From NCBI RefSeq assembly GCF_011386835.1, contig NC_088802.1, positions 2,976,001 to 3,040,000 on the forward strand: a DNA stretch of 64,000 nt, in the 5' to 3' direction. Of the stretch, positions 16,070 to 16,271 are shown piece by piece. The number at the start of each line of letters is the position of its first letter. Position 1 is the stretch's first letter. The position numbers and the translations under genes were made by a program. Under the pieces are notes generated by a model. It was not told where the DNA came from and did no database searches. It saw only the letters and a list, made by a program, of their open reading frames with translations. This DNA is from Chrysemys picta bellii (lineage: Eukaryota).

Positions 16070-16271
16070 ATAACGTCATGTGACGTGGCAGTTTTCAACC
16101 AAGAGTGTTTCCGCTTTTCTCCAGCGTCTCGGCGTGCTTTCTGTGAACACAACGGAAAGTGAAAGGGAAAATTGTCACAGCTGGGGTGTGTCTGAAATCC
16201 TTCAGCCCACTGCCCGCTGGAGGAGCTGGAAGAAGCAGGGGAGTTTCACTGCTGGCTGCCCCCCAGTAAGT
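16070..16271 (+). promoter_or_regulatory. Putative ATF/CRE + triple-IRF (ISRE) promoter and first non-coding exon of the 508-aa gene
   Basis: ACGTCATGTGACGTGG (16073-16088), GGAAAGTGAAAGGGAAAATT (16154-16173), donor CA|GTAAGT at 16266. Matching candidate acceptor tccctccag|aacATG at 23117/23118. Confidence 0.6.

What the first reader, a model, noticed from the sequence alone, without database searches (positions are those of the whole stretch)
16070..16271. Enhanceosome-like promoter (ATF/CRE, triple IRF, degenerate kB) for the 508-aa gene, 6.9 kb upstream of its coding exon
Seen: overlapping CGTCA/CATGTG/TGACGTGG at 16074-16088; GAAAGT-GAAAGG-GAAAAT at 16155-16172; donor CA|GTAAGT 100 bp later; and an acceptor ccctccag| 3 nt before the ATG at 23121. 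Established: TGACGTGG is the ATF6/XBP1 UPRE consensus, and the IFN-beta enhancer orders ATF, IRF and NF-kB sites the same way (AAGTGAAAGTGGGAAATTCC there, AAGTGAAAGGGAAAATTGT here). Inference: virus- or IFN-inducible and possibly ER-stress-responsive transcription.
Basis: partly seen in the sequence, partly recalled or inferred. Interest (0 to 1): 0.78.

Follow-up and report, generated by a model that had tools for sequence, protein, structure and literature searches.

The report
Interferon-type promoter of orphan turtle gene

Summary
The proposed acceptor at 23117|23118 is not used. Contigs of four RNA-like public runs from four studies all begin on the genome at 22936, after ttcattttccag, and each carries 30-48 further letters that are not found in 19000-22935. 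So the 508-aa gene does have a spliced non-coding leader exon, joined to 22936. The 22936 acceptor is invariant in eight turtle loci.

The block 15966-16444 lies upstream of the orthologues in Mauremys, Chelydra and Chelonia. Its longest invariant run is the donor (CCCCCAGTAAGTAGC), and the GAAA repeat sits a fixed 98-101 nt before it. The join of 16265 to 22936 could not be shown directly.

The ATF-like site keeps only GTCnTGTGACGT; the UPRE-specific GG is not conserved. Its distance to the IRF site varies (67-86 nt), and the "kB" does not fit the consensus. The head-to-head 308-aa paralogue has its own conserved GAAAGTGAAAG plus donor.

Verdict: an ordinary ISRE/IRF-type promoter of an orphan gene pair, not an enhanceosome. 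Inducibility is untested.

The parts
16074..16088 (+). ATF/CRE-like cluster (CGTCA, CATGTG, TGACGTGG). Only the core GTCnTGTGACGT (16075-16086) is shared by four turtle species.
16155..16172 (+). Triple GAAA repeat holding two overlapping GAAANNGAAA cores (16155-16164, 16161-16170), an IRF-E/ISRE-type site. At least one core or AAnnGAAA survives in all four species; Chelydra has a 6-nt deletion that leaves GAAAGGGAAAA.
16218..16265 (+). Inferred non-coding exon 1, minimum extent. The RNA contigs carry up to 48 letters 5' of the exon-2 junction, which would place their 5' end at 16218 if this is the exon. The TSS is at or a little upstream of that point. This part is inferred, not shown.
   Evidence: overhangs of 48, 48, 30 and 43 nt; for conservation
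16266..16271 (+). Splice donor GTAAGT. It lies inside the longest invariant run of the four-species alignment (CCCCCAGTAAGTAGC, 16260-16274).
16266..22935 (+). Inferred intron 1 (6670 nt), with tandem arrays at 17855-19092 and 20136-20585 and interspersed repeats. RNA contigs cover none of the unique sequence of 19985-22545.
22924..22935 (+). Acceptor in use, ttcattttccag|. Exon 2 starts at 22936. The acceptor is invariant in eight turtle loci.
22936..23120 (+). Transcribed 5' leader within exon 2 (185 nt). It holds a perfect kB decamer GGAATTTCCC at 22969-22978 and two upstream ATGs (22984, 22995).
23110..23117 (+). It is transcribed through in the assembled contigs, and its AG is not conserved.
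23121..24647 (+). 508-aa ORF with four 98-aa repeats (residues 77-468) and a KVLG/KVLD repeat tail. The family is reptile-only and uncharacterised. The ATG at 23121 is not conserved in other turtles.
3904..3986 (-). Matching arrangement for the head-to-head 308-aa paralogue (ORF 1380-2306, minus strand): GAAAGTGAAAGT at about 3986-3975 (core 3977-3986) followed by the donor ctggcag|gtaggt about 70 nt downstream, near 3905. The motif GAAAGTGAAAG is conserved in four other turtle loci.

Best explanation
Window 15966-16271 is the TATA-less promoter and short non-coding first exon of the 508-aa reptile-specific gene. Transcription starts at or a little upstream of about 16218. Exon 1 ends at 16265 and is spliced over a 6.67-kb intron to 22936, not to 23118. 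That gives a leader of about 50 + 185 nt before the ATG at 23121. The main regulatory element is the tandem GAAA repeat 16155-16172, about 50-60 nt upstream of the inferred start. It has the sequence of a PRDI/IRF-E-type ISRE and would be bound by IRF-family factors (IRF1/3/7, possibly ISGF3), making the gene interferon- or virus-responsive like hundreds of other ISGs. A conserved CRE half-site (TGACGT) further upstream may add basal or cAMP/ATF input. Shown: the motifs, the donor, their conservation, the use of the 22936 acceptor, and the existence of an upstream exon. Inferred: that the upstream exon is this one, the position of the start site, factor binding, and inducibility.
For: RNA-like contigs from four runs and four studies all break at 22936 and carry 30-48 further letters. 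No joint to any place in 19000-22935 was reported, and the unique sequence of 19985-22545 is uncovered. The acceptor fits the consensus and is invariant in 8 loci. The block 15966-16444 aligns at 79-85% upstream of the orthologous genes in Mauremys reevesii, Chelydra serpentina and Chelonia mydas. Apart from 15613-15963 and 17439-17612, it is the only upstream stretch shared by all of them. The longest invariant run in the block (15 nt) is the donor, where about 0.08 such runs are expected for an invariant fraction of 0.61. The ISRE-to-donor spacing is fixed at 98-101 nt in four species. ISRE cores are enriched in the window, 7 against 1.3 expected. The divergently oriented paralogue has the same layout, and its GAAAGTGAAAG is conserved in four other loci. 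Within single studies some runs hold the transcript (0.6-0.75 of words) and others almost none (0.02-0.04), which indicates regulated rather than uniform expression.
Against: The join 16265->22936 was not observed. The overhang letters were not printed, and a stretch holding both sites would exceed the 6,000-letter limit. Turtles evolve slowly, and the block (82% mean identity) is no better conserved than neighbouring intron (75-86%). The invariant runs at the CRE (8 nt) and ISRE (7 nt) are within chance for this alignment. Chelonoidis and Pangshura carry a CR1 fragment in place of the block yet keep the acceptor and an intact ORF, so those loci must use another first exon. The motif ends ...GAAAGG rather than the GAAACT preferred by ISGF3 (textbook knowledge). 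There are no expression data under IFN or infection.
Confidence: 0.55

Rival explanations
1. The block is the promoter and exon 1, but the gene is not interferon-inducible. The GAAA repeat would serve constitutive or lineage-restricted IRFs (for example IRF4/8 in leukocytes, or IRF1/2 basal control), or would be non-functional, with expression being tissue-specific.
For: The motif is of the PRDI/IRF-E type and lacks the GAAACT tail. Its conservation is no greater than background. Presence or absence among runs of one study fits tissue differences as well as it fits induction.
Against: Two overlapping GAAANNGAAA cores lie at the position typical of ISG promoters. The paralogue and other places in the same 64 kb also carry ISRE cores, 7 against 1.3 expected. 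The gene sits in a Ly6-gene neighbourhood.
Confidence: 0.2
2. The block is not this gene's first exon. The real leader exon would lie elsewhere (16272-19000, or upstream of 15966). The block would then be slowly evolving neutral DNA, an enhancer, or the start of another (non-coding) transcript.
For: The junction was not seen. Two turtle species lack the block but keep the gene. The profile of the block did not match the 5' end of Logan RNA contigs L006/L007 of a more distant turtle homologue.
Against: The donor is the best-conserved element of the block and points towards the gene. No competing exon was seen in 19000-22935. In Chelonia the whole space between the paralogue's promoter and exon 2 is 6.7 kb, with few other shared blocks.
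Confidence: 0.2
3. One reading: an IFN-beta-like enhanceosome in which ATF, IRF and NF-kB sites act as one cooperative unit, with additional ER-stress (ATF6/XBP1) control through TGACGTGG.
For: The order ATF-like, then IRF, then a G/A-rich kB-like string matches the order in the IFN-beta enhancer. AAGTGAAAG is shared with PRDI (textbook knowledge).
Against: The spacer between the ATF-like and IRF sites is 67-86 nt, variable and rich in indels. GGGAAAATTG fails the YYCC half-site. The UPRE-defining GG, CGTCA and CATGTG are not conserved. TGACGTGG occurs at chance frequency.
Confidence: 0.03

Closest known systems
ISRE/IRF-E-driven promoters of interferon-stimulated genes (for example ISG15, IFIT, GBP and MHC class I promoters)
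   Same: One or two GAAANNGAAA cores within about 100 nt upstream of a TATA-less start, a short non-coding first exon, and neighbouring paralogues that carry the same element.
   Different: The 3' flank is GG rather than CT. Inducibility and factor binding are untested. The gene itself is a reptile-only orphan with no Pfam family and no structural match.
IFN-beta enhanceosome (PRDIV-PRDIII/I-PRDII)
   Same: The order of the ATF-like, IRF and kB-like strings, and the 9-nt identity AAGTGAAAG with PRDI.
   Different: The elements do not abut. The spacing is variable and there is no consensus kB site. The block drives (if anything) a structural or effector gene with a spliced leader, not an intronless cytokine gene.
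UPRE/CRE elements (ATF6/XBP1 TGACGTGG; CREB/ATF TGACGTCA)
   Same: TGACGTGG is present in Chrysemys and Mauremys, and the TGACGT half-site is conserved in four species.
   Different: The bases that distinguish a UPRE from a CRE vary between species. No ERSE or other UPR element was noted.

Membership tests
ISRE/IRF-E-containing ISG promoter | A GAAANNGAAA (AANNGAAA x2) core close upstream of the transcription start | tested here: met
   Two overlapping cores at 16155-16170, about 50-60 nt upstream of the inferred contig 5' end at 16218. The position of the start is inferred.
ISRE/IRF-E-containing ISG promoter | The element is conserved in orthologous promoters | tested here: inconclusive
   A core survives in all four species, with fixed spacing to the donor. 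The conservation does not exceed the background of this slowly evolving lineage.
ISRE/IRF-E-containing ISG promoter | The promoter is physically linked to the gene's transcript (TSS and splice junction) | tested here: inconclusive
   An upstream exon of at least 48 nt spliced to 22936 is shown. Its identity with 16218-16265 is not shown.
ISRE/IRF-E-containing ISG promoter | The transcript is induced by interferon, virus or poly(I:C) | not testable with these tools
   No stimulated turtle RNA data were available here, and no paper mentions the gene.
IFN-beta-type enhanceosome | Contiguous ATF, IRF and NF-kB sites with fixed spacing and phasing | tested here: not met
   The CRE-to-ISRE distance is 86, 67, 79 and 86 nt in four species, with indels between the sites.
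IFN-beta-type enhanceosome | A consensus NF-kB site (GGGRNWYYCC) | tested here: not met
   GGGAAAATTG at 16165-16174 lacks the YYCC half. The only perfect kB decamer lies 6.8 kb away, in exon 2 (22969-22978).
UPRE (ATF6/XBP1) | TGACGTGG/A retained as such | tested here: not met
   TGACGTGG in Chrysemys and Mauremys, TGACGTTG in Chelydra, TGACGTCG in Chelonia. Its frequency in the window is at chance.

The most novel reading that the evidence does not exclude
The 508-aa gene and its head-to-head 308-aa paralogue form a reptile-specific, interferon-regulated gene pair. They encode tandem 98-aa domains whose fold matches no solved structure, and they are embedded in a Ly6 cluster that carries further ISREs. 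This would be a lineage-restricted family of antiviral or immune effectors unknown in mammals and birds.
Probability: 0.35. Interest if true: 0.5.

Novelty: new member of a known kind. Interest (0 to 1): 0.3.

Why it matters
If the inference holds, it gives the correct gene model: a 5' exon, a 6.67-kb intron and a 185-nt leader with upstream ATGs. It also gives a testable regulatory hypothesis for an orphan gene family found here only in turtles, a crocodilian and squamates, whose repeat domain has no recognisable fold. That would add a candidate lineage-specific interferon-stimulated gene pair to the poorly charted reptile innate immune system. As a piece of regulatory logic it is ordinary: an ISRE promoter like many others, not a new enhanceosome.

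Tried and rejected
1. I tried an exact look-up of the partial product (residues 1-104) to fetch the RNA contig and read its 5' overhang. It is not on record.

2. I compared the 5' ends of Logan contigs L006/L007, which carry a 62%-identical homologue from another turtle, with the window and with a profile of the exon-1 block. By eye CACAGCTGGGG and a CCCnCA|nTCCnAnG junction look alike. The scores do not exceed background: local score 22 against a background of 29, and the only nhmmer hit lies elsewhere on the minus strand. I did not use this as evidence.

3. I looked for alternative leader exons within 19000-22935. The pieces covered there (19143-19590, 19655-19984, 20242-20351, 20791-20846) are interspersed or tandem repeats with depths in the thousands, or tiny contigs. 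None is joined to the gene's contig.

4. Pfam, Foldseek against the PDB (best E 0.037, TM 0.38) and VIA-align wide (best Z 4.1) on an AlphaFold model of one repeat (pLDDT 82) gave no family or fold.

5. Literature searches for the LOC identifiers and for reptile ISGs found nothing on this gene.

6. I considered that the block 15966-17497 might be a lineage-specific insertion, because it is missing in Chelonoidis and Pangshura. I rejected this because it is present in Mauremys, Chelydra and Chelonia, and a CR1 fragment occupies its place in the two species that lack it.

Full report
**What the window is.** The 508-aa ORF (23121-24647, + strand) has its best matches in uncharacterised proteins of turtles (67-82% identity). 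More distant matches are in Alligator, lizards and snakes, and none lies outside reptiles. The exact protein is on record on a 57.9-Mb record of assembly GCA_011386835.2. The protein has no Pfam family. It consists of four 98-aa repeats, residues 77-468. A 308-aa paralogue lies head to head at 1380-2306 on the minus strand.

**Checking the observation.**
- The string ccctccag ends at 23117, three bases before the ATG.
- The ISRE core GAAANNGAAA occurs 7 times in the window against 1.31 expected, and no shuffle of 100 reaches 7.
- TGACGTGG occurs twice against 0.94 expected, which is chance level.

**RNA evidence.**
- The look-up of sequencing runs listed about 20 runs that hold the coding stretch. 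Their kind is a guess ("RNA?").
- I laid X1, X2, X3 (organism A, about 1% different from the window) and X5 (organism B, identical) on 19000-24900. A stretch holding both proposed splice sites would be about 7.1 kb, which exceeds the operators' limit of 6,000 letters.
- Coverage is confined to the gene and to known repeats. The unique sequence of 19985-22545 has depth 0, so these are transcript assemblies.
- In all four runs the gene's contig matches from exactly 22936 onward. It runs unbroken through 23117/23118 and the ATG, and carries 48, 48, 30 and 43 further letters 5' of 22936 (table 8, records 8, 16, 23, 27). No joint to any place in the laid stretch was reported for them.
- The genome at that point reads ttcattttccag|atcccaag, a textbook acceptor.
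- So the gene has a spliced leader exon, but exon 2 starts at 22936.

**Conservation of exon 2.** In an alignment of eight turtle loci (Chrysemys, Mauremys, Pangshura, Chelonoidis, Gopherus, Chelydra and two Chelonia), the stretch AGCTCTTTGTCCC...TTCATyTTCCAG| is invariant at the acceptor. The ATG at 23121 is GTG or CTG in the others. The leader contains a perfect kB decamer (GGAATTTCCC, 22969-22978), conserved in six of the eight.

**Conservation of the candidate promoter and exon 1.**
- BLAST places window 15966-16415/16444 upstream of the orthologue in three species:
  - Mauremys reevesii: L003 4100-4923, 79% identity.
  - Chelydra serpentina: L008 14796-15235, 85% identity, with a 437-aa ORF following at 18841.
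  - Chelonia mydas: L010 7075-7543, 82% identity.
- In the four-species alignment, the invariant runs of 7 nt or more are GCCTGGT, GGCGAAC, TTCGGGACC, TGTGACGT, GAAAGGG, CCCCCAGTAAGTAGC and ATGTTTCTC.
- The 15-nt run across the donor is the longest. At an invariant fraction of 0.61, about 0.08 runs of that length are expected. The 7-8-nt runs at the CRE and ISRE are within chance. Phylogenetic footprinting has little power in this slowly diverging clade.
- The block (82%) is no better conserved than adjacent intron (75-86%).
- The geometry is informative. The ISRE block lies 101, 98, 100 and 100 nt before the donor block in the four species, whereas the CRE block lies 86, 67, 79 and 86 nt before the ISRE, with indels between them.
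- Chelydra has lost GAAAGT but keeps GAAAGGGAAAA. Chelonia has GGGAAGTGAAAGGGGAAAT.
- The UPRE-defining bases vary (TGACGTGG, TGACGTGG, TGACGTTG, TGACGTCG). CGTCA and CATGTG are Chrysemys-only.

**Species without the block.** In Chelonoidis (L002) and Pangshura (L009), a CR1 3' fragment sits where window 15966-17497 would be, and the alignment resumes at 17497/17509. Both keep the acceptor and an intact ORF, so they must use another first exon. This weakens the claim that the block is indispensable. It may also reflect paralogy, because the locus has a history of tandem duplication: an extra 291-aa gene in Chelydra, and a remnant of the acceptor plus leader at window 37185-37360.

**The paralogue.**
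- About 1.6 kb upstream of the 308-aa ORF, on the minus strand, the sequence reads GAGAGAAAGTGAAAGTGTCGG. About 70 nt downstream comes the donor CTGGCAG|GTAGGT.
- GAAAGTGAAAG is conserved at the corresponding place in Chelonoidis, Mauremys, Chelydra and Chelonia.
- An acceptor-like site, ttggcttcag|gtcccgag...aaggaattgcaccc, resembles the start of the 508-aa gene's exon 2 and precedes the paralogue's ATG.
- Both paralogues therefore seem to share the plan of ISRE promoter, short non-coding exon, intron and coding exon.

**Interpretation.** The best reading is an ordinary IRF/ISRE-type promoter with a non-coding exon 1 (at least 16218-16265) spliced to 22936. The steps that are shown are the motifs, the donor and its conservation, the acceptor in use, and the existence of an upstream exon outside 19000-22935. 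The steps that are inferred are the identity of that exon, the TSS, factor binding and inducibility. The IFN-beta enhanceosome analogy fails on spacing and on the kB site, and the UPRE reading fails on conservation. The underlying idea of a distal ISRE promoter with a spliced leader survives in corrected form.

**The protein.** An AlphaFold model of one repeat was built from 72 aligned repeats (pLDDT 82, pTM 0.72). It has three N-terminal helices, a four-stranded beta-meander and a C-terminal helix. It has no convincing match in the PDB: Foldseek best E 0.037 with TM 0.38, and VIA-align best Z 4.1. No paper mentions the gene.

Noticed in passing
window 22969-22978 (+): A perfect NF-kB decamer GGAATTTCCC (reverse complement of GGGAAATTCC) lies inside the transcribed leader of exon 2, 34 nt after the acceptor. 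It is conserved in 6 of 8 turtle loci and in the Logan RNA contig L007. It could be an intragenic kB element or part of an alternative promoter.
   Followed up: partly
window 22984-22998 and 22995-23077 (+): Two upstream ATGs, a 4-codon and a roughly 27-codon uORF, lie in the real 5' leader. Most other turtles lack them.
   Followed up: partly
window 23121 (+): The ATG that opens the 508-aa ORF is GTG or CTG in the other seven turtle loci. Annotated orthologues start further downstream (the Mauremys model starts near the equivalent of Met44), so the first ~43 residues may be lineage-specific or untranslated elsewhere.
   Followed up: partly
window 37185-37360 (+): A duplicate of the intron end, acceptor and exon-2 leader (TTCATCTGCCAG|ATCCCAAGAGGAGCAGG...GGAATTTCCCAC) sits in the Ly6 gene region without an obvious following repeat-domain ORF. 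It may be the remnant of a third paralogue or a borrowed 5' exon.
   Followed up: no
window 32311-32326 (+); also 25012 and 28223 (+): A classical tandem ISRE, GAAACTGAAACTGAAA, lies about 2 kb upstream of the Ly6-type genes, and there are two further single cores. ISRE cores are enriched in this window (7 against 1.3 expected).
   Followed up: no
L002 6570-7935; L009 5500-5900: Chelonoidis (Testudinidae) and Pangshura (Geoemydidae) share a CR1 3' fragment at the same position, replacing the exon-1 block, whereas Mauremys (Geoemydidae) has the block. This is incongruent with the species tree and suggests paralogy, incomplete lineage sorting or gene conversion in this duplicated locus.
   Followed up: partly
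window 24559-24635 (+): The 12-nt coding repeat (KVLG/KVLD tail) is one unit (12 nt) shorter in the organism-A transcripts of runs X1-X3 (table 4).
   Followed up: no
L006 38-173 (matches window 478-345): The Logan contig of another turtle joins the homologue's 5' leader to an oppositely oriented exon that encodes a hydrophobic, transmembrane-like segment. A similar sequence lies at window 345-478 (+). This may reflect a divergent neighbour gene or a chimeric assembly.
   Followed up: no
window 7226-14081: LINE-type reverse-transcriptase ORFs (777 aa at 8801-11134, minus strand) and other retroelement-like ORFs fill much of the 11 kb between the two paralogues' promoters. This explains why the interval is 20.8 kb here but about 8 kb in Chelonoidis.
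   Followed up: no
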